64,000 nucleotides of DNA, from the NCBI GenBank assembly GCA_002189035.1, contig NEEC01000002.1:496001-560000 (forward strand), in the 5' to 3' direction. Of the stretch, positions 37,244-55,199 are shown piece after piece (position 1 is the stretch's first letter; each line of letters starts with the position of its first letter). The position numbers and the translations under genes were made by a program. The notes beneath the pieces were generated by a model. The model did no database searches. It was not told the DNA's origin and saw only the letters and a program-made list of their open reading frames with translations. Origin of the DNA: Utricularia gibba. Lineage: Eukaryota > Plantae > Magnoliophyta.

Positions 37244-38103
37244 ACAGTCAAGTTTTATGCACACACATATTTGCCTCTGGGGAAGCACAGTGATCTCCTT
37301 GTACGTACTTTACAGTGGGTTTATGAAAGAAGTTACTCTTCTCTGGTTCACCTGAAAGGCATCCTCATTTACTGATGACAATCTGCAGTGCTGAAATCTT
37401 TGAATCAATACACATTACACAGTCCCACCTCATCCGCACAGTCTGATCAGTGGAACTCCGGCCCCGGGGAGGGCCCAAATGGAAGAGTGGGCGCAGTTGA
37501 GCTGTGCACCACTCGTTTGTAGTCTTATTCTGTGTTTATTGTTAAAAATTCAAAGTTGATCTCTAGTGGGGTTGTGTGTTTTGGGGATGCTTTTGTAGTG
37601 TGGCGAATCAGAATCCCCACCCCCACGTGGTCCATACCTATCCAATTCAAATGGTCAAAAAGTCGCCTCCCAAGCTGCCAATCGGCACTTACCATTCTGT
37701 ACATGTCTCCCTGCCTTCGCCACATGGTTTTAGTGTCTCTGCGCCGGTGCGCCCGAGCGACTCGGTGCGCGGACCAGTACGGACCTCTCCTCTCATAAAT
37801 ATTTAAAAAATAATAGAATTATTTATATAATATTATAGATATTAGTGGACTTATTTTTTTATATATATTTCCAAAAAACTCGCGAAATTCGTAATAATTT
37901 TAATTATTAATTAAAAAAATAGTTTTTTTTAGGACATACGAATATTTATTCCCTAAGAAAAGGACATCGCTGCTACCGGGGTTCCAGTCCCGCTCTCTCT
38001 TTCAACCTCATCCACGGCGTGAAGTGTTTGAGAGTACTTTCTTGACGTTATCCCTGACAATAGTGTTGAGTCGAAGTGTTCCAGACTCACAACTCTTGTG
38101 TAT

Positions 38104-41100
38104 ATGGCGGCGTCGGGAAGGAGAAACGATGATCGGAGCTCACAAGCATTGAATCGAGTGCAGTCCTCCGGTTCATCCCACAGTGACCCCTACGTCGCAA
38201 GCAGTTATAATTTGAACAGGTGGGGTGATTCCTCCAGCAGGGCTGTCGAACAATTTAGCGCAGATGCAAGGCTTCACGCCGTTTACGAGCGATCCGGTGA
38301 GTCTGGGAAGTCATTTGACTACTCAGAGAGTGTTCGGATAACCAATCAGTCTGTGCCTGAGCAGGAGATGACAGCGTATTTGTCGAAAATGCAGCGGGGC
38401 GGCCTTGTTCAGCCCTTTGGCTGTATGATCGCGGTTGACGAATCGAGTTTCAGAGTTATTGCCTACTCAGAAAACGCGCGAGAAATGCTGGGGTTGACGC
38501 CCCAGTCGGTGCCAAGTCTCGAAAGGGCCGAGTTCTTGACAATTGGAACTGATGTCAGAACCCTTTTTACACCCTCAAGCTCTCTTTTACTCGAGAAGGC
38601 TTTTGGGACAAGGGAGATTACTCTCCTGAACCCTATTTGGATCCATTCTAAGAATTCCGGGAAGCCCTTTTATGCAATTTTGCACCGGATTGATGTTGGG
38701 ATTGTAATTGATTTGGAGCCTGCCAAGACCGAAGACCCTGCTCTCTCAATTGCTGGCGCCGTTCAGTCGCAGAAGCTTGCGGTGAGAGCCATTTCCCTTT
38801 TGCAGTCTCTTCCTAGTGGGGACATCAAGCTTTTGTGTGAAACGGTGGTTCAGAGTGTGAGGGACCTTACCGGGCACGATAGAGTTATGGTTTATAAGTT
38901 TCACGAGGATGAGCATGGTGAGGTTGTGGCAGAAAGCAAGAGATCAGATTTGGAACCTTATCTTGGTTTGCATTACCCTGCAACTGATATCCCGCAGGCT
39001 TCAAGATTTTTGTTTAAGCAGAGCAGAGTAAGAATGATTGTAGACTGTCACGCCCCACCTGTTTCCGTGATTCAAGATGAAACTTTGATGCAACCCCTGT
39101 GTTTGGTAGGTTCTACTTTAAGAGCCCCTCATGGCTGCCATCCACAATACATGGCGAATATGGGTAGCATTGCCTCGCTTACCTTGGCAGTTATCTTAAA
39201 CGGGAATGATGAAGATGTTGCAAAAGGAACAAATTCACAGAAGCTATGGGGCTTGGTTGTTGGCCATCACACATCTGCTCGATACATTCCTTTCCCTCTT
39301 CGATTTGCATGCGAATTTCTTATGCAGGCATTTTCGCTTCAACTGAAGATGGAATTGCAGTTGGCATCACAGTTGGCGGAGAAGAATGCTCTAAGAACAC
39401 AAACACTGTTATGTGATATGTTGCTTCGAGATTCACCTACTGGCATAGTTAAACAAAGCCCCAGTATCATAGACATTGTGAAATGTGATGGGGCTGCTTT
39501 GTACTACAAGGGTAACTATTACCCGCTTGGTGTTACACCAACAGAAGCTCAGATAACAGAAATATTAGAATGGTTGTCAGCATTCCATGGTAAATTAACC
39601 GGATTGAGCACGGACAGTTTAGCTGATGCTGGCTTTCCAGGGGCACTCGCTTTAGGAGATGCAGTCTGTGGAATGGCTGTGGCTCACATCACAGCAGGTG
39701 ATTTTTTGTTCTGGTTCCGCTCCCACAGTGCAAAAGAGATCAAATGGGGCGGCGCAAAGCATTATCCTCAAGATAAAGATGATGGTCATCAGATGCATCC
39801 GCGTTCTTCATTTAAAGCATTTCTAGAAGTGGTCAAAAGCCGGAGTTTACCATGGGAGAATGCAGAGATGGATGCAATTCACTCATTGCAGTTAATTCTG
39901 AGAAATTCATATCAGGATGATGGAAGCAACTCCAAGGCAGTGATACGTGCTCCTATGGATTTGGAGTTGCAGGATATGGATGAATTAAGGTCTGTCGCAA
40001 GAGAAATGGTCAGGTTGATTGAGACCGCAACGGCTCCTATATTTGCCGTGGATCTCGACGGACACATAAATGGCTGGAACGCAAAAGTTGCAGAGCTGAC
40101 AGGTCTTCCTGCTGAACAAGCTATGGGAAGGTCATTGGTTCATGATCTTGTTCACAAGGAATCACAGGAAACTGCTGACAAGCTTCTCTTTCATGCTTTA
40201 AGAGGTGTGATCCTCCACTACTACCTTTTTTTTCGTATGCATCAAGTCCAAGTATTGCTTTATCAATCAAAAAAGAGTATTATTTTGTCATTCATCACCT
40301 GATTTCTTTTGAAATGCATTTTCCATGAAGCTTGTTGAGTGATATAACGTACATAGGTGAGGAAGACAAGAACATCGAATTAAGGTTGCGGACTTTTGGC
40401 TCTGATCAGAATAAGCAAGCTGTTTTTGTGGTGGTGAATGCATGCTCTAGCAAGGACTTAGCAAGCAATATTGTTGGTGCATGCTTTGTCGGTCAAGATG
40501 TTACTGCTGAGAAAGTGGTGATGGATAAGTTTGCAAACATTCAAGGTGATTACAAGGCTATCGTGCAGAATCCAAACCCGCTGATCCCTCCAATATTTGC
40601 TTCAGACGACAACACCTGCTGTTCTGAATGGAATACTGCAATGGAAAAGCTCACTGGATGGAAAAGAGCAGAGATAATTGGGAAGATGTTGATTGGGGAG
40701 ATATTTGGAAGCTGTTGTGAGCTGCAGGGTTCTGATGCAATGACAAATTTCATGATCGTCTTGCATAATGCTATCGAGGGGCAGGATACAGAGAAGATGC
40801 CGTTTTCCTTTTTCGACAGAGATGGCAAGTGCATTCAAGTGCTCTTAACAGCGAATCCGAGACTAAATATGGGTGGCCGCATTATAGGAGCCTTTTGCTT
40901 CTTGCAGGTTGCAAGTCCCGAGTTGCAGCTAGCCCTTAAGGTGCAGAGACAAAAAGATCAGAAATGTGTCTCAAAAGTGAACGAGTTGGCCAACATTTGC
41001 CAGCAAATTCAGAATCCATTAGCAGGCCTGCGTTTCAACCACATGCTATTAGAATCAACACATTTGAGTGAAGATCAAAAGCAGCTTCTGCAAACCAGCT

Positions 41101-41852
41101 CTGCTTGTGGGAAGCAGATTTCAAAAATTATGAGAGATGTTGATTTGGAAACCATAGAGGACGGGTATGTCTCTGTGGATGCTATACTCTACATTGCAGT
41201 GATCATCTAGTTTCTATAATGGCTGCATATATCATCGTTATCAAGACTCTGGTTTTGCAGTTCAATGGAGCTGGAGGAGGTGGAATTCATACTTGGAAAT
41301 GTAATGAACACTGTTATCAGCCAAGTGATGCTGTTGCAGAGAGAAAGAGGTCTACATTTGATCCGTGAAATCCCTGAAGCTGTCAAGACGCTAGCCGTCT
41401 ATGGCGATCAAATTCGAATCCAACAAGTATTGGCTGATTTCCTACTGAACATGGCTCGCTGTTCGCCATCTCCTGAAGGTTGGGTGGAGATCCAAGTCAA
41501 TCCCAGCTTCAAAGAAACACTCCAAGGAACCACCATCGCCCGCATCGATTTCAAGTACGACCCTTCTGCGCTGCAAGATTCCACTGCAACTCCAATGTGT
41601 CTAACCAGTGAAATTCATTGTGAATGAAGGATCATCTGTCCAGGTGAAGGTCTTCCCTCCCAACTAGTCCACGACATGTTCCGGGGCCAGAGCAGCCGAT
41701 GGGCGACGCCGGAAGGCCTAGGACTCGGAATCTGCCGACATATTGTGAAGCGCATGAAAGGAGAAGTCCAGTACGTTAGAGAATCAGAGAGATGTTGCCT
41801 CACTGTCATCCTTCAACTGCCAGTCGTGAAGCCCACTCTGAGGATCGTTTAA
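38104..41852 (+). CDS. PHYB: Phytochrome B-clade photoreceptor, 4 exons
   Basis: PAS-GAF-PHY-PAS-PAS-HKRD architecture with [10 protein letters not shown], chromophore Cys in [16 protein letters not shown], and canonical intron positions. TAA at 41850-41852. Confidence 0.95.
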
Positions 41853-42527: not shown

Positions 42528-45320
<2,793 letters not shown>

Positions 45321-45963
45321 CCCCCTAGGCCAGAACCGAAGGTGTTGGCTATTAGAAGTAAACCAGTCTTCTCTTAACTTTTATCTGCTGTTTCTTATTC
45401 CTTTGAGGGCTTGAACGAATCATTCAAACAAGCAAAAAGAGCTGCTTTGCAGCGCTACTGTGGAATGAAAAAATGGGCCTGAGATCATACAGAAAAAGGA
45501 CAAAAAGGCAAAAATTCAACACTCACTGTGAAAAGTGTGACAATATATGATTGCAATGTTCAGAGGATGAGAGGGGGAGGGAGGAACCCCATTGGTATGC
45601 ACAATCACTTTCTGCATAATTATGTGCTGCTGCTCCTCTTCTCCTGCGCACGGGCATTTATGAATCAACAGAGGTGCATTCACTGCACTGCGTTCAGTTC
45701 AGCTTGCTTTCACCATATGTCAATTTGATAAATTGTGCAGGTTAGGTCAATCAATCTCTTCCACATTCACAGCATTCTCATTCATTCATTCCGCCTGCTT
45801 CTGAAAATTGCTGGCTTTCTTTTCAATTGTGGAGCGCAGAGCAGAGCAAACACAATGATGATGACATGGAAAAGAGATAATCTTTGCAGAAACTACTGCA
45901 GTCAACTACCCTTCTGCTACATCCCCTGTTTACTTAACATAATTAATCATTCTTCCTCATCTC

Positions 45964-45970
45964 TATAAAA
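45964..45970 (+). promoter_or_regulatory. TATA box of the TAS3 transcript (putative)
   Basis: TATAAAA about 75 nt upstream of the sORF ATG and followed by a C14 tract. Confidence 0.55.
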
Positions 45971-46044
45971 TCCATCCCTGGAACGCCAGCCATAACCCCC
46001 CCCCCCCCCACGTCAAAAGCCCCAAGATTTCATTCCCAGCCACC

Positions 46045-46191
46045 ATGTTCCAAGGTAATCAAAGGGTTCCCTCTTCAGCTGCACTACTGAGGAACGGCGG
46101 CCGGAACCCGCGGAGACTACAGAATTCAATAAAGATAGCAACGTTCAACTTCGGCGCAGAACATCATCAATCCATGGCTTGCTACTTCTAA
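46045..46191 (+). CDS. TAS3 upstream small ORF (48 aa)
   Basis: ATG in good context (CACCATG). Peptide MFQGNQRVPSSAALLRNGGRNPRRLQNSIKIATFNFGAEHHQSMACYF*. The stop ends 8 nt before the 5' miR390 site. Confidence 0.6.
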   Translation: MFQGNQRVPSSAALLRNGGRNPRRLQNSIKIATFNFGAEHHQSMACYF

Positions 46192-46199
46192 GAATGCTT

Positions 46200-46390
46200 G
46201 GTGCTATCCTACATGAGCTCTCTCCTCCTTTCTTTCTACCCATGTGTTTTTTTTTCTTGACCTTGTAAGGCCTTTTCTTGTCCATTCGTTTCCCGTCGTC
46301 CCCTCTGCTTAGGTCACAAGAGCAGAATTTTCTTACCTTTTCTTGTTTCGCATTCCCGCTTCTCCCTCGCCGTCTATCCCTCCTGAGCTG
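46200..46390 (+). ncRNA. TAS3: TAS3 trans-acting siRNA gene (miR390/AGO7 two-hit locus producing tasiR-ARF)
   Basis: 5' site GGTGCTATCCTACATGAGCTC (46200-20) has central mismatches. tasiARF TTCTTGACCTTGTAAGGCCTT (46254-74). 3' site CCGTCTATCCCTCCTGAGCTG (46370-90) is complementary to miR390 AAGCUCAGGAGGGAUAGCGCC at positions 2-17. Confidence 0.95.
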
Positions 46391-47456
46391 CCCTCATCGT
46401 GAACTTCCTTCACAGTGTACGGAAGTCGCTTCCTTGTTTGTATCACTGAAATTTATTACACGATGTATGCCTCTTTTTTTCTTTTAAAAAGATGGGCTCG
46501 AAGGCCCAATGATAATGGGGCCATTTAATATTTACAAGGCCCATTGGGCTGTATACCCCGAATCACGGTATCGGTGATTCGGCAGTACAATATGAACATT
46601 AATAGTTTAAAAAAAAGGAAAATGCACTAATTTATTTTAAAATTAATTTTCCTAAAAAGTCATTGCATCGTAGCATGTGGAGAAGAATACGGGATGCAAG
46701 GGCTTTATAGTAAAATATTAATAGTCAAAGTATGGCTGCTGTGAATAGGAGTATTATCGGTAGATTTTCAGCGCTTTGAAAATTAATTAATCGACTATTA
46801 AATAGTTATAAATAAATAAATTTTAACTCATATTCATTTCCAAATTTTTTGATGAATGGAAAAATGTATTAATAAATCATAAATGTTTTAAATTTCCAGA
46901 AAGTTATAAATATTCTACACTAATTTCACATCAATTATCTACGTAGAAATGATTAGATTGAACATCATAACTAATTGAGACCTTTTATCCAAAAATATAA
47001 AGCTTAAAATTATGAGATTTGTATGTTCTCGTATAAATATAATTATATGCTAATATTTGGTAATTTTGTTTTTTGAAATAAAATATTTTTAAAATTGAAT
47101 CGAAAATTTTTTTGGATTTGGAAGATGAGTAGGAAGAGACCTGTTCTTGTTTGGGAGATTGATTCTCTACGGTGTGAATGGATTGGTTGGGACACGTGGA
47201 AGCCCAGCCCAGGAAGGGACCGGAGAAGAAGATCCCCTTCCGGTCGCCGTTCACACGTCTCTGCAATTCCTCCTCCACGTTTTATGCAAATGAAGCGGAG
47301 CAGGGAGGGGTTTCAATCCAACTTAACAAATCACAGCCTTACAACATGTACCGTTTCTGCCAAAACTCTATAACCAAAAAAACAAAGCTATGGCTACCGC
47401 TCCCAAGAACTTGAATTGTTATTGAGTTTGCTGGTTTCTGTGTGTTGCGTTTGTGT

Positions 47457-48685
47457 TTATGAAAATGAGAACAGAGGATTTGCCTCGGGTTGCTCTTGAT
47501 GTTGGAAGAACCACATGTCATCACCCAAATACCAGTCCTCCGGCGCTCCTCCGCCGCTGATCCACTGGTTGCTGCTGTTGTGATCAATGAACTCCGGCCC
47601 TTGATTCAGGTACGCGTGCCCGGATTGACTATTCATGGGTTGTTGTTGGGTCACGTAGGGTAGCTGGTAGCCGCTATCCAGAGTCACCTGATACTGGTTG
47701 CTGTTGCAGAAATCCGTTTGTTCGGTCGCGGGTGTTCCGAAGGAATCGGAGGACAAGTCGGCGCTGGAAATCTTCCAAGCCCCGCTTTCAAAACCGCCGA
47801 AAACATGGGCTTGGCCTCCCATGCTGGTGTTTATACTGTGATCGCTGAGGTGGGAAGTGGTGGAGGAGGAGGAGGAGGAGCCCATCACCGGAACCCCGTC
47901 GTTTACGGCGGCGGAAGCAGAAGAAGCTTGGATCCGCTCTACTAATCTGGGCATCCATAAGTAGCGCATGGTGTCCTTGAATTGCTTACTGTTAACGTCG
48001 CATTTCAGCTGCTTCGCATGCTTCTGCACCCTGGTTCTCCAGTAGTTTTTGATCTCGTTGTCTGTTCTGCCGGGTAAATGTTGAGCAATTTTCGACCACC
48101 TGAACCCAGTAACCGGAAATTCAGATGCAGCCCTCGTTTATAAGCGCAGCAGAAAGAACAGGAGAGAGCAGTACCTGTTTCCCCATCTGGAATGGAGTTC
48201 GAGAATCAGAAGCTGTTCTTCCAGAGTGATGTTTCCTCGCCGGACGTCGGGCCGGAGATAATTCAGCCACCTCAATCTGCAGCTCTTTCCAGTTCTCTTC
48301 AATCCTGAAACCCACCCAACACCATATAAAAGAGTCAGTTTTAATTTTCTGATTCAGAGCAGGCGAAGGAAGACAGATCAAGAAGAAAAAGTTTCAAAGA
48401 AATTTAGATTTTTTTATAACTGAGCTCCATAAAAAGATTGCAGCTTTAGAGTTTCTAAACAAAACCCACCAAACTCCACCTCAGAAAAGAAGAGGAAAAG
48501 CAGAGATGGGTTTCCTTACCAGCGCAGCGAGAAAGGGAATTCCATCGGCCCTCTCCATGGCGAGCGATGTAATTGATGAGCGCAAAATCTTCTTCAACGG
48601 TCCAGGGCCCTCTTCGCAGATCCCCTCCTCCCGCAGACGAGTCTTCCTCGCTCTGCCCATAACTGCAAGTCTTCATCTGCTCCAT
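47457..48685 (-). CDS. MYB108: R2R3-MYB transcription factor, subgroup 20 (MYB108/MYB78-like), 3 exons
   Basis: [24 protein letters not shown]|[26 protein letters not shown]..|[56 protein letters not shown]. The WxPRL motif is diagnostic; the exact orthologue is uncertain. Confidence 0.9.
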
Positions 48686-50201
48686 TTTTTACCCAAATCC
48701 AAAGACAGCAGTAGCCAGAAATGGAGAAGCAAAGGCAGTACAAATCAAACCCGGTGTTTTTCGTTTCGAACTCTGGTGGGCTGTTTGACAGGAAGGCTAT
48801 GGGTTTATATATAGTGGGGAGGTTTCAACAATGAAGGAGTTGAAGTTTGAAAAAAGAAAAAAGGAAGGTGGTGACTGTAGCACAAGGGAAGTGGTGTGCA
48901 CGTCCGATCAAGAAGCCGCAATTGCGACTTCTGAATAGTGGCATTTATTCAAGTGCACGCCCTTTTCAATGGAGTACAAATGAAAGGTTATCGCACATGG
49001 GGATATGAGTCACGTCACGCCCACTGGGAGAACACGACCCAGAAAACAAAGACATTCCCTTTGGCATTCCCACCCTGGAGGGTTCCAGAGAAGCAGATCA
49101 GTTTACAGTTCACAGTTTACAGGGTGGCAGGATGAACAGGGATTCATGAATCCTGGAAGGATATGTATGTGTGCCCTGTGAGTTTGGTAAAGAGGCGAAG
49201 AAGATGGCCCCTATCCACCCCCTAGCAGAGGCAAGGCATGCATGTCACACTTGAATGCAAATACGAACCCAAGTACACAAGGGTTTACTTTACCTTTGCT
49301 CCATTAAAGAATAGAGGCATGGGGTGCCCATTCCATTCCCACTATTACACCACACTCCCTCTTCCTACGGAGGAGTACTTCACCTCCTAAGCATTCCGCC
49401 AACGCGAATGCGTGGGTGTGGATCCAGAGAAGCCCACGTCACTCACTCTCAGAACTCGAGAATCAGGCGGAGGGTATGCGTGTGTTCAGTCTCAGAGAGT
49501 TTGATTTTGGGAATGCTGAGATGACGTCATTCCATTGGCCTGGAACCAGGAATGGAACGTGTGCATTGAAAAGTGGGGAAGGGGGCCCGTGGACGTCGGC
49601 TCTGAATGTGTACAGTGTGACCCTTTTAACAAGATCAGCGTACGCCACGCCAAAACCATTTCCAATTGGGTTTTGATTGGGACCGGCTCAGACCCTCTTC
49701 CTGCGAGAGCATGGGCCGCGATTCATGGCGTTCATCTTGGGCGTGCAGGGGGATCAACCAACGGATTCAAGCTTACAATATGCGTTACTTTTATCAGGAG
49801 CACCTACAGCTTTAGCAGGAGCGGGGTGGGTTTCCCTTCTGGAAGGATTCCACTCCATGATCCCGCAAGTCGTTGGGTCAACGAAGAGCAACCAATGATT
49901 GTGTGGTATTCGGAAAGCGATCGAGTGTTGTGGTTTTGGGGTGGCCCGGCGAATTCGTCAAAATGATGGGGCCCGAAGAGCGCCCGCATTTTCTGGGGTT
50001 TGACCTGCCTGTGTGTCAGTCAGTCATCATCATCCCATCTTCCATCCCTCTGAAACAGTAGTTCAGTTCGATGTGAAAGTAAGTAAAATTGCAGTGCAGA
50101 GAGGGGAGGGGAGCCCTGGCCCTCCCGTCCCGGGAGTGGAGGTGGACTTTCCAAATTGCGATCCCAGCGGACCCCCTGCTCGCTTTTCAACACATTCGAC
50201 T

Positions 50202-51063: not shown

Positions 51064-52845
51064 CTACTTGGGTCGTCGGTTGAAGTTCTGGGCCATCTCC
51101 TCCGCCTGCCAAACACATGATGTCACCATTTGAATTTGAATTTCAATGCACAAAACCATCAAATCTCATGCCTTGTCGAAGACCAGCTTTGGGTTGCGGA
51201 TCATGTCTCCTGGGGTTGGCTCCAGCATCTTTGTTGAGAGGGTTAAGCGGCCCCTTTCACGATCGTGGTGAAGCACGATGACCTGCAGAGGAAGCAGGAA
51301 TGTTTTGTCGTCACATATCTGACATCCCCTAAATGAAAGATGAAATCTTGCATCCCACCTTCAGTGTGTCTCCGGGGTGAAGGACTGTGGCGATGTCTGT
51401 CACACGATCATGGCTGATCTGGCTGATGTGCAAGAGACCACTGATCCCACCCATGTCTATGAAGGCGCCGTATGGTTTCAGACTCAGAACAGTCCCAGTG
51501 ACTACGGATCCTACGACGAGTTGAGCTTGGCCATCGGCCAGAGCATTACGGTTGCTTAAGACAATTCGTCTCCGCTCTTCTTCCATTTCCAGGAATTTCA
51601 AGGGAAGTGTTTTTTCCAGAAGTTCTTCTCCTGTTGATTTCTGAAAGCAAAACAGCATTTCGTCATGGCAAACGCATTATCATTCCATAAAACTTTCACA
51701 ATTAATCTCTTATTGTAAAATCCAATAAACAAAAGGCTTTTAGAAGAAAGAACTCACACTTGAGATATGTGAAAATGGAACAAAAGCAGGAAGGCATTCT
51801 ACGACTACAACCACTCCCCTTTGTTTGCTTCAACTACCTGAAAAGTGACAACCATGAGACATAAGTCAGGGTACTATCAAGAATTATGATCCATTCAGAT
51901 TTTCGGTATAATGTGAATTCATGGATTTCTGCATATAGATACAAATCAAAACATATACAAATCCCCTGGAGACCAACTTACCTGTGGAGGAAACGTACCT
52001 TACCGTTGATAATCACATCTTCAGCCTGCAGCTGTCTACACCGTTCCCAAGCAAGGTCGCTTTGAATTGAACGCAAGCTCAAGATCCAACAATCATCCTC
52101 TTCATTCTCATCCACAACTAGAAATTCGTCAACTAAACCTGGGAATATACCCGCCTCTTTCACATGCTTGATGCTATGGATAGATGCCTCGCTGAGAGGC
52201 AAGTATCCAGATGATTTTGCATTTATCTCAACCAATGCTCCATTTGCGTCAACACTGTATACAGTCCCCTTAACCTTCAAAGACAGGGAAATGAAATTAT
52301 GTATCAGAATCTCCATGATTCTTGAATCATTTTCAGTATCTCGCTTGTATACGTTCTTTATTCCAAATGGTAATAAAACAAGAACACTTTCCAGATAATG
52401 CAACACGAACTATGATGACTTTGAAAACCAACTGCAGACACCATAAAGCTGGACGATTTAGAAAAGAAATCACACGCCTAAGCCAAGAATCATCACTAAA
52501 GAATCATCGAACTAGAATGGATGAGGAGATGAAAAAAGCTCTAACCTTGGTTCCAATTTCGATGTTGGAGTCGTACTTTTCAACTGCGGCATCAAATTCT
52601 TCGAATGTGAAATTCACACCTTCCATGGGAGATGTAATGCACCGCTCGTACGCCGCCTCAAACATCTGCTTCAGCTTCCGTCTCTCCCTGACCTCATCGC
52701 TCGTCCTCACACCAGCCGCTGCAGCGACTATGGTTCTACTTCTATTAAGCACCTTGCAGCAAATCCCCGCGGAAACGCAAGATTTTTTACCTAGGTCTAA
52801 AATTGACGGGTACGGGTAGTCGATCACCCCGAATCGCTGCGCCAT
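51064..52845 (-). CDS. RPS1: Plastid 30S ribosomal protein S1, diverged tandem copy B (C-terminally truncated; apparent 1-nt deletion at 51816-19)
   Basis: Same exon structure as copy A. Starts at the second Met (MAQRFG) and has a GC donor at 51171. The last exon reads [13 protein letters not shown] (TAG 51064-66) instead of continuing [17 protein letters not shown]... Confidence 0.8.
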
Positions 52846-53195: not shown

Positions 53196-55199
53196 CTAAA
53201 GATCATCATCCCCAGCAGGGGAGGCTCCACTCAAATCCAGAAGACCACCCTCTACCGGTGCGTCTGGGTCCAGAGGTCCGAAAATTCCCTCGGCGCTCAG
53301 CGTTAGTCCACCCTGAACCACCCCAAAGAAACAAAGCCAGAAAGAAGAAATGCAGGGTGAGTGTGTGTATTCTTTTGTTGCAACTCTGAAGCGAATAAGA
53401 AATACCTCAGGCTGGAATCTCAGCATATCAGCACGAGCCATGGCTTCTGCTTGAGCAATTCTTTGTCTAAATGTCTGAGCCATCTCTTCAGCCTGCCCAG
53501 GCATCATGTAAGAACAGATATGGGTTCAATCCTAGTGCCATGTATGACTATTACCTTCTCAAAAACCAGCTTTGGGTTGCGGATCATGTCGCCTGGAGTT
53601 GGCTCCAACTTCTTTGTTGAGAGGCTCACTCGTCCCCTTTCACGATCATGGCTAAGGACCATCACCTAACAGAGGAATATGAAGCATTGAGTCACTCGTC
53701 CCACATGACAGGAAATGTGAAATAATGCATCCATCACCTTCAATGTGTCTCCAGGCTGAAGGACTGTAGCGATATCAGCCACACGGTCATGGCTGATTTG
53801 GCTGACGTGCAGAAGGCCATTGATCCCACCAATATCGATAAAGGCGCCGTAAGGTTTCAAACTCTGAACAGTCCCAACGACCACAGATCCTATACCAAGC
53901 TGAGCCTGGCTATCAGCCATGGCCTTGCGGTTGCTCAGAACAAGACGTGTTTGTTCCTCATCCACTTCCACAAATTTTAATGGAAGTTCTTTCTCCAGAA
54001 GTTCCTCTGCTGTTGATTTCTGAAAAAAGAAAAAGAATCATTATTTCCTGTTTAAAGAACACCGGCACATCGTCGTTCCATGAAACGACCACAAAATCAA
54101 GGGATTTAAAAAAAAATATAGGGTTTTCAGAAAAGAACTGACGGTGGAGATCTGTGAAAATGGAACAAAACCACGAAGGCCTTCGAGGAGCACAACCATA
54201 CCACCTTTGTTTGCGCCAACCACCTGAAGAATGGCAACCATTAGATAAAATCACAAATGTGACACACGGGAACAATTTCACACTAGAAATTACTAAGAGC
54301 TTAAATACCTTCAAAACTTACCTTACCCTTGACAACCACATCTTCAGCTTGTAGCTGTCTGCACCTTTCCCAAGCAAGGTCTCTTTGAATTGAACGCAAA
54401 CTCAAGATCAAACTATCATCAGCTTCATTCTCACCAACAACTACAAATTCCTCACGTAAACCGGGAATAATTCCAGCCTCCTCCACATGTTTGATGGTAT
54501 GGACAGACGCCTCGCTTAAGGGCAAATATGCGGATGATTTTGCAGTTATATCAACTATTGCTCCATTTGCATCTACACTGAAAACAGTTCCCTTGACCTT
54601 CAGAGTAGAGGAAACCAGACAATTCATCAGCATCCCGTAAGTCTTCAACCATGTTCAAATTTCGCCCCACACGCTATCACTATTCTTTATTTGTTTCCAA
54701 ACGGTTACCAAACCACAAACAAGATAATGCAACACATAAACCAAGGCATTAACTGCAGGAACACCAAAGCTCGATCCTCAGAAAAAAAGAAAAGAAAAAC
54801 CACATGCCCAACAAAGCCTTGCCGATAATCCCGGGAAACATTCACTCATTCAACGCGACTCATAATTACTGCCAAGGAGGGGAGAAAAAAGCTGACCTTG
54901 GTTCCAACTTCGAAGTTGAAATCGTACTTTTCAATAGCGGCGTTAAATTCTTCGATGGTGAAGTTCACACCTTCCATGGGAGCCGTAATGCACCTCTCGT
55001 AAGCCTCTTCGAACAGCTGTTTCAGCTTCTGTCGCTCTCTTACCTCCAGGCTGGCTGCGTACCCTGCCGCAGAGACTATGGTTCTACTTCTAGCGACCAG
55101 CTTGTAGCAGTAACCCCTGGATATGCAAAATCTGTTACGAAGTGTTGAGATTGGCGGGCATTTGAGCCCTCCAAATTGATGCGCCACCATGGACGCCAT
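53196..55199 (-). CDS. RPS1: Plastid 30S ribosomal protein S1, copy A (full length)
   Basis: [29 protein letters not shown]|[13 protein letters not shown].., S1 repeats with [27 protein letters not shown], and [11 protein letters not shown]. Confidence 0.95.

What the first reader, a model, noticed from the sequence alone, without database searches (positions are those of the whole stretch)
46200..46390. Hidden TAS3 tasiRNA locus between galactokinase and MYB
Invisible to the ORF track, but the whole two-hit architecture can be read. The 5' miR390 site has mismatches opposite miRNA nt 10-11 (non-cleavable type) plus an extra mismatch at nt 8. The 3' site is cleavable, with the predicted cut between 46380 and 46381. 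Counting 21-nt registers back from the cut puts D6 at 46255-46275, within 1 nt of the tasiARF at 46254-46274. The miR390-AGO7-TAS3-ARF3/4 pathway (leaf polarity, phase change, lateral organs) is established knowledge.
Basis: partly seen in the sequence, partly recalled or inferred. Interest (0 to 1): 0.8.

Follow-up and report, generated by a model that had tools for sequence, protein, structure and literature searches.

The report
Short-type TAS3 tasiRNA gene, transcribed
This stretch is a genuine, transcribed copy of TAS3, the well-known plant non-coding gene that microRNA miR390 turns into small RNAs that repress auxin-response factors, so it is a correct call but an ordinary family member.

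Summary
Window 46200-46390 (+) carries two miR390-complementary sites flanking an exact 21-nt tasiARF at 46254-46274.

- **5' site (46200-46220):** it has the classic position-10 mismatch and position-11 G:U wobble, plus mismatches at miRNA nt 8 and nt 1.
- **3' site (46370-46390):** nt 2-17 pair perfectly and nt 18-21 are unpaired. The predicted cut is 46380/46381.
- **Geometry:** the two cuts lie 170 nt apart (8x21+2). The tasiARF is 1 nt off both registers, as published for short, one-tasiARF TAS3 (TAS3S).
- **sORF:** a 48-codon sORF stops 8 nt before the 5' site, another published TAS3 hallmark.
- **Transcription:** RNA contigs from two samples give one unspliced, mismatch-free ~460-nt RNA (46015-46474) next to a silent stretch.

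Not shown here: phased siRNAs, cleavage, ARF targeting, and the transcription start, which could be its own TATA or read-through from galactokinase.

The scan noted this same stretch before (s1-261669). It also noted two other TAS3 loci and a position-8 MIR390 variant elsewhere in this genome.

Verdict: a real TAS3S-type gene, a new member of a known kind, of low interest.

The parts
45964..45969 (+). TATAAA box, a candidate core promoter. It lies about 30-50 nt upstream of where the RNA contig begins.
   Evidence: pattern; contig starts at 46015. Its function is inferred, not shown.
46015..46474 (+). Transcribed TAS3 precursor. One unspliced RNA contig of 460 nt (run X1) or 457 nt (run X2) with 0 mismatches. 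The strand is inferred from the TAS3 architecture, because contigs carry no direction.
   Evidence: records 5 and 10. The same runs show GT..AG joints in galactokinase and the MYB, which proves they are RNA. Depth is zero over 46639-47306; four samples hold 62-84% of the words of 45950-46500.
46045..46191 (+). Short ORF of 48 codons plus stop. The stop ends 8 nt before the 5' miR390 site. No Pfam family matches.
   Evidence: Bazin et al. (PMC5699049) report that TAS3 genes of diverse plants carry a poorly conserved 50-58-codon sORF ending 8-20 nt 5' of the miR390 site.
46200..46220 (+). 5' miR390 site of the binding (non-cleavable) type. Nt 10 is mismatched and nt 11 is G:U, with extra mismatches at nt 8 and nt 1.
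   Evidence: Duplex energy is -28.7 kcal/mol, against -34.9 if nt 8 were paired and -44.3 for a perfect site.
46254..46274 (+). tasiARF, an exact 21-mer TTCTTGACCTTGTAAGGCCTT. The in-register 5'D6(+) product would be 46255-46275.
   Evidence: The same 21-mer is used as the TAS3 primer in longan (PMC4680215).
46275..46295 (+). Possible relic of a second tandem tasiARF, identical at 12 of 21 positions. Not decidable.
   Evidence: P is about 0.011 at this fixed position under shuffles of the spacer, but another 21-mer in the spacer (46334) also scores 12/21.
46370..46390 (+). 3' miR390 site of the cleavable type. The predicted cut is between 46380 and 46381.
   Evidence: Its pattern (nt 2-17 paired, nt 18-21 and nt 1 unpaired) equals the consensus over 1891 3' sites in Xia et al..
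46450..46474 (+). AAUUUAUUA-like poly(A) signal, followed by the 3' ends of the RNA contigs at 46471-46474.
   Evidence: The poly(A) site itself is inferred.
45741..45839 (+). GT..AG intron of 99 nt downstream of the galactokinase stop codon (45318-45320). It joins the 3'-UTR contig (45223-45740) to an exon contig that runs to 45996. This may be an upstream exon of the TAS3 precursor or a read-through isoform of galactokinase.
   Evidence: joint 45736/45836 with cut +4, at depth 10 and 5.4; contig 45836-45996 at depth 7.2.. No contig covers the C14 run at 45996-46009.

Best explanation
This is a TAS3 gene of the short, one-tasiARF subtype (TAS3S) in a Lamiales-like asterid with a compact genome.

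Shown here: a non-coding RNA of about 460 nt is transcribed from the region (46015-46474).

Inferred from the established miR390-AGO7-TAS3 pathway:
1. Ribosomes translate the 48-codon sORF up to just before the 5' miR390 site.
2. AGO7-miR390 binds the weakened, centrally mismatched 5' site and slices the 3' site between 46380 and 46381.
3. SGS3 and RDR6 copy the 5' fragment into double-stranded RNA.
4. DCL4 dices it in 21-nt steps from the cut.
5. The sixth register (46255-46275), or a 1-nt-slipped 46254-46274 form, is the tasiARF that represses ARF2/3/4-class mRNAs.
For: - Exact tasiARF and two co-oriented miR390 sites at the reported coordinates.
- Both sites reproduce the published consensus patterns. 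The 5' site has a nt-10 mismatch and a nt-11 G:U. The 3' site has nt 18-21 and nt 1 unpaired with a perfect centre.
- Cut-to-cut distance is 170 = 8x21+2. The tasiARF starts 127 nt (6x21+1) before the first nucleotide after the 3' cut, and 43 nt (2x21+1) after the first nucleotide past the predicted 5'-site cut. Its end lies 64 nt from that cut.
- Xia et al. describe exactly this for TAS3S: a 2-nt difference between the two registers, and about 65 nt from the 5' site to the tasiARF in eudicots.
- My register arithmetic is validated on three canonical two-tasiARF loci from metagenomes. They give exactly 168 and 147, both mod 21 = 0.
- The site-to-site span of 191 bp fits the 170-190-bp one-tasiARF class of dicots.
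- The sORF ends 8 nt before the 5' site.
- A discrete RNA contig spans the unit in two samples, next to a silent stretch. Four samples hold it.
Against: - No small-RNA or degradome data could be examined, so phasing and cleavage are unproven.
- The extra nt-8 mismatch costs about 6 kcal/mol and opens a 3-nt internal loop in the 5' site. AGO7 binding may therefore be weak.
- In Mimulus lewisii, also Lamiales, the TAS3S gene gave no small RNAs in floral buds.
- The transcription start is unresolved. Spliced RNA from upstream reaches 45996 at similar depth.
- All RNA evidence comes from one study and from contigs without strand information.
- No orthologous TAS3 could be fetched from relatives. 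Scans near MYB108/78-like genes (9 loci, 8 species) and PHYB genes (2 loci) found none.
Confidence: 0.82

Rival explanations
1. A transcribed but functionally decaying TAS3 copy. The precursor is made, but the weakened 5' site (mismatches at nt 1, 8 and 10) no longer recruits AGO7-miR390 well. Little or no tasiARF is produced, and other TAS3 loci of the genome do the work.
For: The 5' duplex is only 65% of the perfect-site energy. The full-length, uncleaved precursor is what is assembled. The M. lewisii TAS3S gave no small RNAs in the floral-bud libraries sequenced. At least two more TAS3 loci are noted in the same genome (not checked by me).
Against: The tasiARF is 21/21 intact and the 3' site core is 16/16 intact, which argues for purifying selection. 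The positionally conserved sORF is intact. A single cleavable miR390 site suffices for TAS3 tasiRNA production in Arabidopsis reporters (PMC5435969). Positions 8-12 of 5' sites are naturally variable. The other two TAS3 loci noted carry insertions in their 3' sites, so this is the noted copy with the canonical one.
Confidence: 0.12
2. This rival concerns origin, not function. The locus is a former two-tasiARF TAS3 of the D5/D6 type, as in longan, whose downstream tasiARF (46275-46295) has decayed. It would not be an ancestrally single-tasiARF TAS3S. This is earlier scan note s1-261669.
For: The 21-mer directly following the tasiARF keeps TTCTTG, CC, T and CCC in register, 12 of 21 positions, with P about 0.011 at that fixed position. 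Tandem tasiARFs at 5'D5+ and 5'D6+, with 158 nt between the sites, exist in longan. Here the spacing is 149 nt and the intact copy sits at about D6.
Against: An unrelated 21-mer in the same T/C-rich spacer also reaches 12/21. The 2-nt difference between registers, the 64-nt distance from 5' site to tasiARF and the 191-bp span are the specific TAS3S signature. Two-tasiARF loci are exactly in phase with the 3' cut, whereas this one is 1 nt off.
Confidence: 0.2
3. The TAS3 RNA is not an independent unit. It is the tail of a spliced read-through, or long 3'-UTR, isoform of the upstream galactokinase gene.
For: RNA contigs run on from the galactokinase stop (45318-45320) to 45740. They are then spliced across 45741-45839 and continue to 45996, at depths (10, 5.4 and 7.2) like those of the TAS3 contig (8.7 and 6.4). 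The only hole is an 18-nt stretch (45997-46014) that contains most of a C14 run.
Against: A TATAAA box lies at 45964 and the TAS3 contig starts at 46015 in both samples. No contig bridges 45997-46014. The sORF-to-5'-site arrangement only makes sense if ribosomes can start at 46045, which is unlikely far downstream in a galactokinase mRNA.
Confidence: 0.3
4. A chance resemblance in T/C-rich intergenic DNA.
For: None beyond the low-complexity composition of the spacer.
Against: An exact 21-nt tasiARF, two correctly patterned miR390 sites on one strand, TAS3S phasing geometry, the sORF and a matching transcript all coincide.
Confidence: 0.01

Closest known systems
TAS3-short (TAS3S, one-tasiARF TAS3) of seed plants, as defined by Xia et al. 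2017 (bioRxiv 10.1101/090647) and Krasnikova et al.
   Same: One sense-strand tasiARF lies between two miR390 sites. The span of about 190 bp, the 2-nt difference between the two phase registers and the roughly 65-nt distance from 5' site to tasiARF all match. The 3' site has nt 18-21 unpaired.
   Different: Many eudicot TAS3S genes have a paired (cleavable) position 10 in the 5' site. This one has the A/A mismatch and G:U wobble typical of non-cleavable sites, plus an extra nt-8 mismatch. The register should therefore be set by the 3' cut alone.
Arabidopsis TAS3a (At3g17185), the canonical two-hit TAS3-long
   Same: A non-cleavable-type 5' site (nt-10 mismatch, nt-11 G:U) and a cleavable 3' site. 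An sORF ends just before the 5' site (52 codons in TAS3a, 48 here). From memory, this tasiARF 21-mer is identical to the Arabidopsis 5'D8(+) species.
   Different: TAS3a has two tandem tasiARFs, at D7 and D8, exactly in phase with the 3' cut. This locus has one, at about D6 and 1 nt off. The spacer is also shorter.
Longan DlTAS3 (PMC4680215)
   Same: tasiARFs at the fifth and sixth registers, a short 158-nt spacer and a non-cleaved 5' site. The upstream copy uses the same 21-mer.
   Different: Longan keeps both tandem tasiARFs in exact phase. Here the D5-equivalent is at best a 12/21 relic.

Membership tests
TAS3 (vascular-plant type) | Two miR390-complementary sites in the same orientation on one transcript | tested here: met
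   Sites at 46200-46220 and 46370-46390, both on the plus strand. Both lie inside one RNA contig, 46015-46474.
TAS3 (vascular-plant type) | 3' site with perfect central pairing (cleavable) and nt 18-21 unpaired | tested here: met
   Nt 2-17 are paired, and nt 1 and nt 18-21 are mismatched. This matches the consensus.
TAS3 (vascular-plant type) | 5' site with a position-10 mismatch and a position-11 G:U | tested here: met
   A/A at nt 10 and G:U at nt 11. The extra nt-8 mismatch lies within the variable 8-12 zone.
TAS3 (vascular-plant type) | Conserved sense-strand tasiARF between the sites | tested here: met
   Exact TTCTTGACCTTGTAAGGCCTT at 46254-46274.
TAS3 (vascular-plant type) | tasiARF within +/-1 nt of a 21-nt register from a miR390 cut | tested here: met
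   127 = 6x21+1 from the 3' cut and 43 = 2x21+1 from the 5' cut.
TAS3 (vascular-plant type) | Positionally conserved sORF ending 8-20 nt 5' of the 5' site | tested here: met
   48 codons at 46045-46191 with an 8-nt gap. The criterion is, whose stated range is 50-58 codons, so this sORF is 2 codons short.
TAS3 (vascular-plant type) | Transcribed as a non-coding RNA | tested here: met
   Contigs of 460 and 457 nt in two RNA samples, with a silent flank. No Pfam match for the sORF. The strand and the start site are not shown.
TAS3 (vascular-plant type) | miR390-guided cleavage at the 3' site | not testable with these tools
   This needs PARE or 5'-RACE. Only assembled contigs were available.
TAS3 (vascular-plant type) | 21-nt phased siRNAs dependent on AGO7, RDR6 and DCL4 | not testable with these tools
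   No small-RNA run was offered.
TAS3 (vascular-plant type) | tasiARF target sites in ARF3/4 of the same genome | not tested
   The ARF genes lie outside the window. The window holds no other tasiARF-complementary site.
TAS3S subtype | A single tasiARF, with the two registers differing by 2 nt | tested here: met
   Cut-to-cut distance is 170, mod 21 = 2.
TAS3S subtype | Cleavable 5' site (A:U at position 10); frequent in eudicot TAS3S but not obligatory | tested here: not met
   A/A at position 10. Xia et al. note that a 10th-position mismatch still predominates in most lineages, so this does not exclude membership.
TAS3L subtype | Two tandem tasiARFs exactly in phase with the 3' cut | tested here: not met
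   Only one intact copy. The adjacent 21-mer is 12/21, and the phase is off by 1 nt.

The most novel reading that the evidence does not exclude
The extra mismatch of the 5' site lies exactly opposite miRNA position 8. An earlier scan note (s1-290766, not checked by me) reports an expressed second MIR390 copy in this same genome with a compensated change at guide position 8.

If that variant carries U at position 8, it would pair nt 2-9 perfectly with this 5' site. Duplex energy would improve from -28.7 to -32.7 kcal/mol. The same variant would mismatch the 3' site. That would be a division of labour in which a variant miR390 serves as binder and the canonical miR390 as slicer on one TAS3 transcript.

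A G-to-A change is the likelier compensatory route and would not help pairing.
Probability: 0.1. Interest if true: 0.6.

Novelty: new member of a known kind. Interest (0 to 1): 0.17.

Why it matters
[quoted passage not shown] Locating a copy correctly improves the annotation of this genome. Of the three TAS3 loci the scan has noted here, this is the one with a canonical 3' slicing site, so it may be a main tasiARF source. Beyond that it adds nothing new about the mechanism. The only points of wider interest are two untested links: the nt-8 mismatch and the position-8 MIR390 variant, and the possible read-through origin of the precursor from galactokinase.

Tried and rejected
1. **Rfam.** There was no TAS3-like family match in 44000-49000 at E<=1, and nothing in the whole window at gathering score. 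Rfam therefore gives no help here.
2. **Synteny.** I fetched nine loci around MYB108/78-like genes from Paulownia, Sesamum (two paralogues, with one of them fetched from two assemblies), Erythranthe, Vitis, Primulina, Hibiscus and Forsythia. I also fetched two loci around PHYB, from Paulownia and Handroanthus. None has a tasiARF or a paired miR390 site within 8-10 kb. One look-up found no record. My remembered lead, that Arabidopsis TAS3b sits next to MYB78, could not be tested and gained no support from these loci.
3. **Metagenome scan.** A scan for 'tasiARF, gap, 3' site' returned only three two-tasiARF loci. They were useful as a control for the register arithmetic but not as orthologues.
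4. **Runs X5 and X6 (other organisms).** They match only from about 46248 across the tasiARF, and the match does not reach the miR390 sites. That shows tasiARF conservation and nothing more.
5. **Literature.** A search for the three possible position-8 miR390 variants found no paper. No supplement is held for Xia et al..
6. **Organism.** The best PHYB and MYB hits are Lamiales, at 82% and 47% identity. Introns are tiny. Xia et al. show a Utricularia TAS3 with a bulged 3' site, like two loci noted in this genome. This suggests Lentibulariaceae but does not show it.
7. **Chance.** A chance origin was considered and rejected.

Full report
**What is in the sequence**

On the plus strand, 46200-46220 reads GGTGCTATCCTACATGAGCTC and 46370-46390 reads CCGTCTATCCCTCCTGAGCTG. 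I paired both against miR390, AAGCUCAGGAGGGAUAGCGCC. That sequence is printed in many papers found.

- The 5' site has mismatches opposite miRNA nt 1, 8 and 10, and G:U wobbles at nt 11 and 19.
- The 3' site pairs perfectly at nt 2-17 and is unpaired at nt 1 and nt 18-21.
- By the 10/11 rule the 3' cut falls between 46380 and 46381.
- The 21-mer TTCTTGACCTTGTAAGGCCTT lies at 46254-46274.

The only correction is that nt 11 is a wobble, not a mismatch.

**Not chance**

The tasiARF 19-mer pattern has one perfect hit in the window. Only 0.05 hits are expected even when three mismatches are allowed. The two exact hits to CTATCCNNNNTGAGCT are the only ones in 64 kb, and they lie on one strand 170 nt apart. 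A looser pairing scan of both strands of the window finds no other site of comparable quality.

**It fits the published family portrait feature by feature**

Xia et al. (bioRxiv 10.1101/090647) analysed 1793 5' sites and 1891 3' sites.
- 5' sites typically have a position-10 mismatch and a position-11 G:U, and positions 8-12 are variable.
- 3' sites always have nt 18-21 unpaired and usually nt 1 mismatched.

Both patterns are reproduced here.

The same paper defines TAS3-short:
- a single central tasiARF;

For eudicot TAS3S the paper also gives a constant distance of about 65 nt from 5' site to tasiARF.

Here the cut-to-cut distance is 170 = 8x21+2. The tasiARF start is 6x21+1 before the first nucleotide after the 3' cut, and 2x21+1 after the first nucleotide past the predicted 5'-site cut. 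Its end is 64 nt from that cut.

As a control of my arithmetic I used three canonical two-tasiARF loci fished from metagenomes. They give exactly 168 and 147, both mod 21 = 0, for their two tasiARFs.

The site-to-site span of 191 bp also falls in the 170-190-bp one-tasiARF class that Krasnikova and colleagues amplify from dicots.

Xia et al. 2015 count +/-1 nt as phased.

An ATG at 46045 opens a 48-codon ORF. Its stop codon (46189-46191) ends 8 nt before the 5' site. The ORF has no Pfam match.

Bazin et al. (PMC5699049) report that TAS3 genes of diverse plants carry a poorly conserved sORF of 50-58 codons placed 8-20 nt 5' of the miR390 site. [quoted passage not shown]

**Transcription**

Four runs of one study in one organism hold 62-84% of the sampled words of 45950-46500. 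I laid two of them on 43800-48800.

They are truly RNA. Their contigs skip GT..AG introns in galactokinase and CT..AC introns, which are minus-strand introns, in the MYB.

One contig covers 46015-46474 in X1 (460 nt) and 46015-46471 in X2 (457 nt). It has no mismatch, gap or splice. Depth is zero over 46639-47306. This silent stretch argues against genomic DNA carry-over and separates the unit from the MYB on the other strand.

The contig starts 46 nt after the end of a TATAAA box (45964-45969). It ends about 20 nt after an AAUUUAUUA motif.

Contigs have no direction, so the plus strand is inferred from the architecture.

**Unresolved: where the precursor starts**

The galactokinase stop is at 45318-45320. 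Even so, contigs continue to 45740, are spliced across a 99-nt GT..AG intron (45741-45839) and go on to 45996. Their depths (10, 5.4 and 7.2) resemble those of the TAS3 contig (8.7 and 6.4).

Only the 18 nt at 45997-46014, most of a C14 run and the bases just after it, are uncovered. Two readings remain open:
- TAS3 has its own start near 45995-46015.
- Part of its precursors are spliced read-through or upstream-exon transcripts.

I put about 0.3 on the second.

**How it most likely works**

The following is inferred from the established pathway, not shown here.
1. AGO7-miR390 binds the 5' site and slices the 3' site.
2. SGS3 and RDR6 make double-stranded RNA from the 5' fragment.
3. DCL4 dices it in 21-nt steps.
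4. The sixth register yields the tasiARF, which represses ARF2/3/4-class genes.

The nt-8 mismatch weakens the 5' duplex to -28.7 kcal/mol. It would be -34.9 with nt 8 paired, the 3' site gives -34.7, and a perfect site gives -44.3.

This need not abolish function. In Arabidopsis reporters a single miR390 event suffices, and the two-hit layout mainly improves fidelity (PMC5435969). Conversely, a position-10 mismatch does not guarantee non-cleavage.

One caution: the TAS3S gene of Mimulus lewisii, another Lamiales, gave no small RNAs in floral buds. I therefore keep 0.12 on 'transcribed but nearly inactive'.

The 21-mer at 46275-46295 matches a tasiARF at 12 of 21 positions, including the first six. 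At that fixed position P is about 0.011 against shuffles of the spacer. However, another 21-mer in the same T/C-rich spacer scores equally.

Longan has tandem tasiARFs at D5 and D6 with a 158-nt spacer, so a two-copy ancestor is conceivable. The 2-nt register signature and the 64-nt 5' distance point to TAS3S instead. I leave this at 0.2.

**Context**

- The upstream genes are PHYB and galactokinase.
- Downstream on the minus strand is a MYB108/78-type gene.
- The best protein hits are Lamiales.
- Introns are 64-107 nt, so the genome is compact.
- PHYB and the MYB are linked on one chromosome or scaffold in several eudicots, judged from shared contig lengths and gene numbering. Other genes lie between them there.
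- No TAS3 was found within 8-10 kb of these genes in 11 fetched loci. So I could not obtain an orthologue.

**Leads from the scan's own notes (unchecked by me)**

- Two other TAS3 loci in this genome have 3- and 4-nt insertions in their 3' sites. Xia et al. figure a Utricularia TAS3 with such a bulge.
- An expressed MIR390 copy has a compensated change at guide position 8.

The extra mismatch here is opposite position 8. A U8 variant would therefore restore pairing at this 5' site. I could not read the variant's base, and no paper holds any of the three possible 21-mers. I give this 0.1.

**Verdict**

This is a bona fide, transcribed TAS3S-type gene, a new member of a very well known family. 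Small-RNA phasing, the 3' cut and ARF targeting remain to be shown. Interest is low.

Noticed in passing
window 43974-45320: The RNA contigs show two versions of the galactokinase exons. One is identical to the window, at depth about 66. The other is divergent (for example 21 differences in 189 nt) and more abundant, at depth about 177. This is presumably a paralogue or homeologue elsewhere in the genome.
   Followed up: no
window 45741-45839: A 99-nt GT..AG intron lies about 420 nt downstream of the galactokinase stop codon and is spliced in part of the transcripts. An intron in a 3' UTR could make that isoform a target of nonsense-mediated decay. Alternatively the intron belongs to the TAS3 precursor.
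   Followed up: partly
window 45996-46009: A run of 14 C sits exactly between the upstream exon contig and the TAS3 contig. No RNA contig covers it, so continuity across it is unknown.
   Followed up: partly
window 38098-41850 and 47457-48685: PHYB and the MYB108/78-like gene lie only about 6 kb apart here. In Paulownia, Vitis, Handroanthus, Buddleja, Nyssa and others the two are on the same chromosome or scaffold but tens of genes apart. This is consistent with strong compaction of an old linkage block.
   Followed up: partly
window 46068-46085: Inside the sORF, TCCCTCTTCAGCTGCACT is 83% identical to the core of the 3' miR390 site and its flank (46377-46394). It is probably chance, since it does not pair acceptably with miR390.
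   Followed up: no
window 46248 onward, across the tasiARF (runs X5, X6): Contigs from two other organisms match only the tasiARF neighbourhood. In X6 the summed word depth is very high (bin mean 3667), presumably from a strongly expressed TAS3 of an unrelated plant.
   Followed up: no
window 51329-51658 and 53666-53971 (- strand): Two ORF pieces carry near-identical S1 RNA-binding-like repeats (…[37 protein letters not shown]). They look like exons of one multi-S1-domain gene.
   Followed up: no
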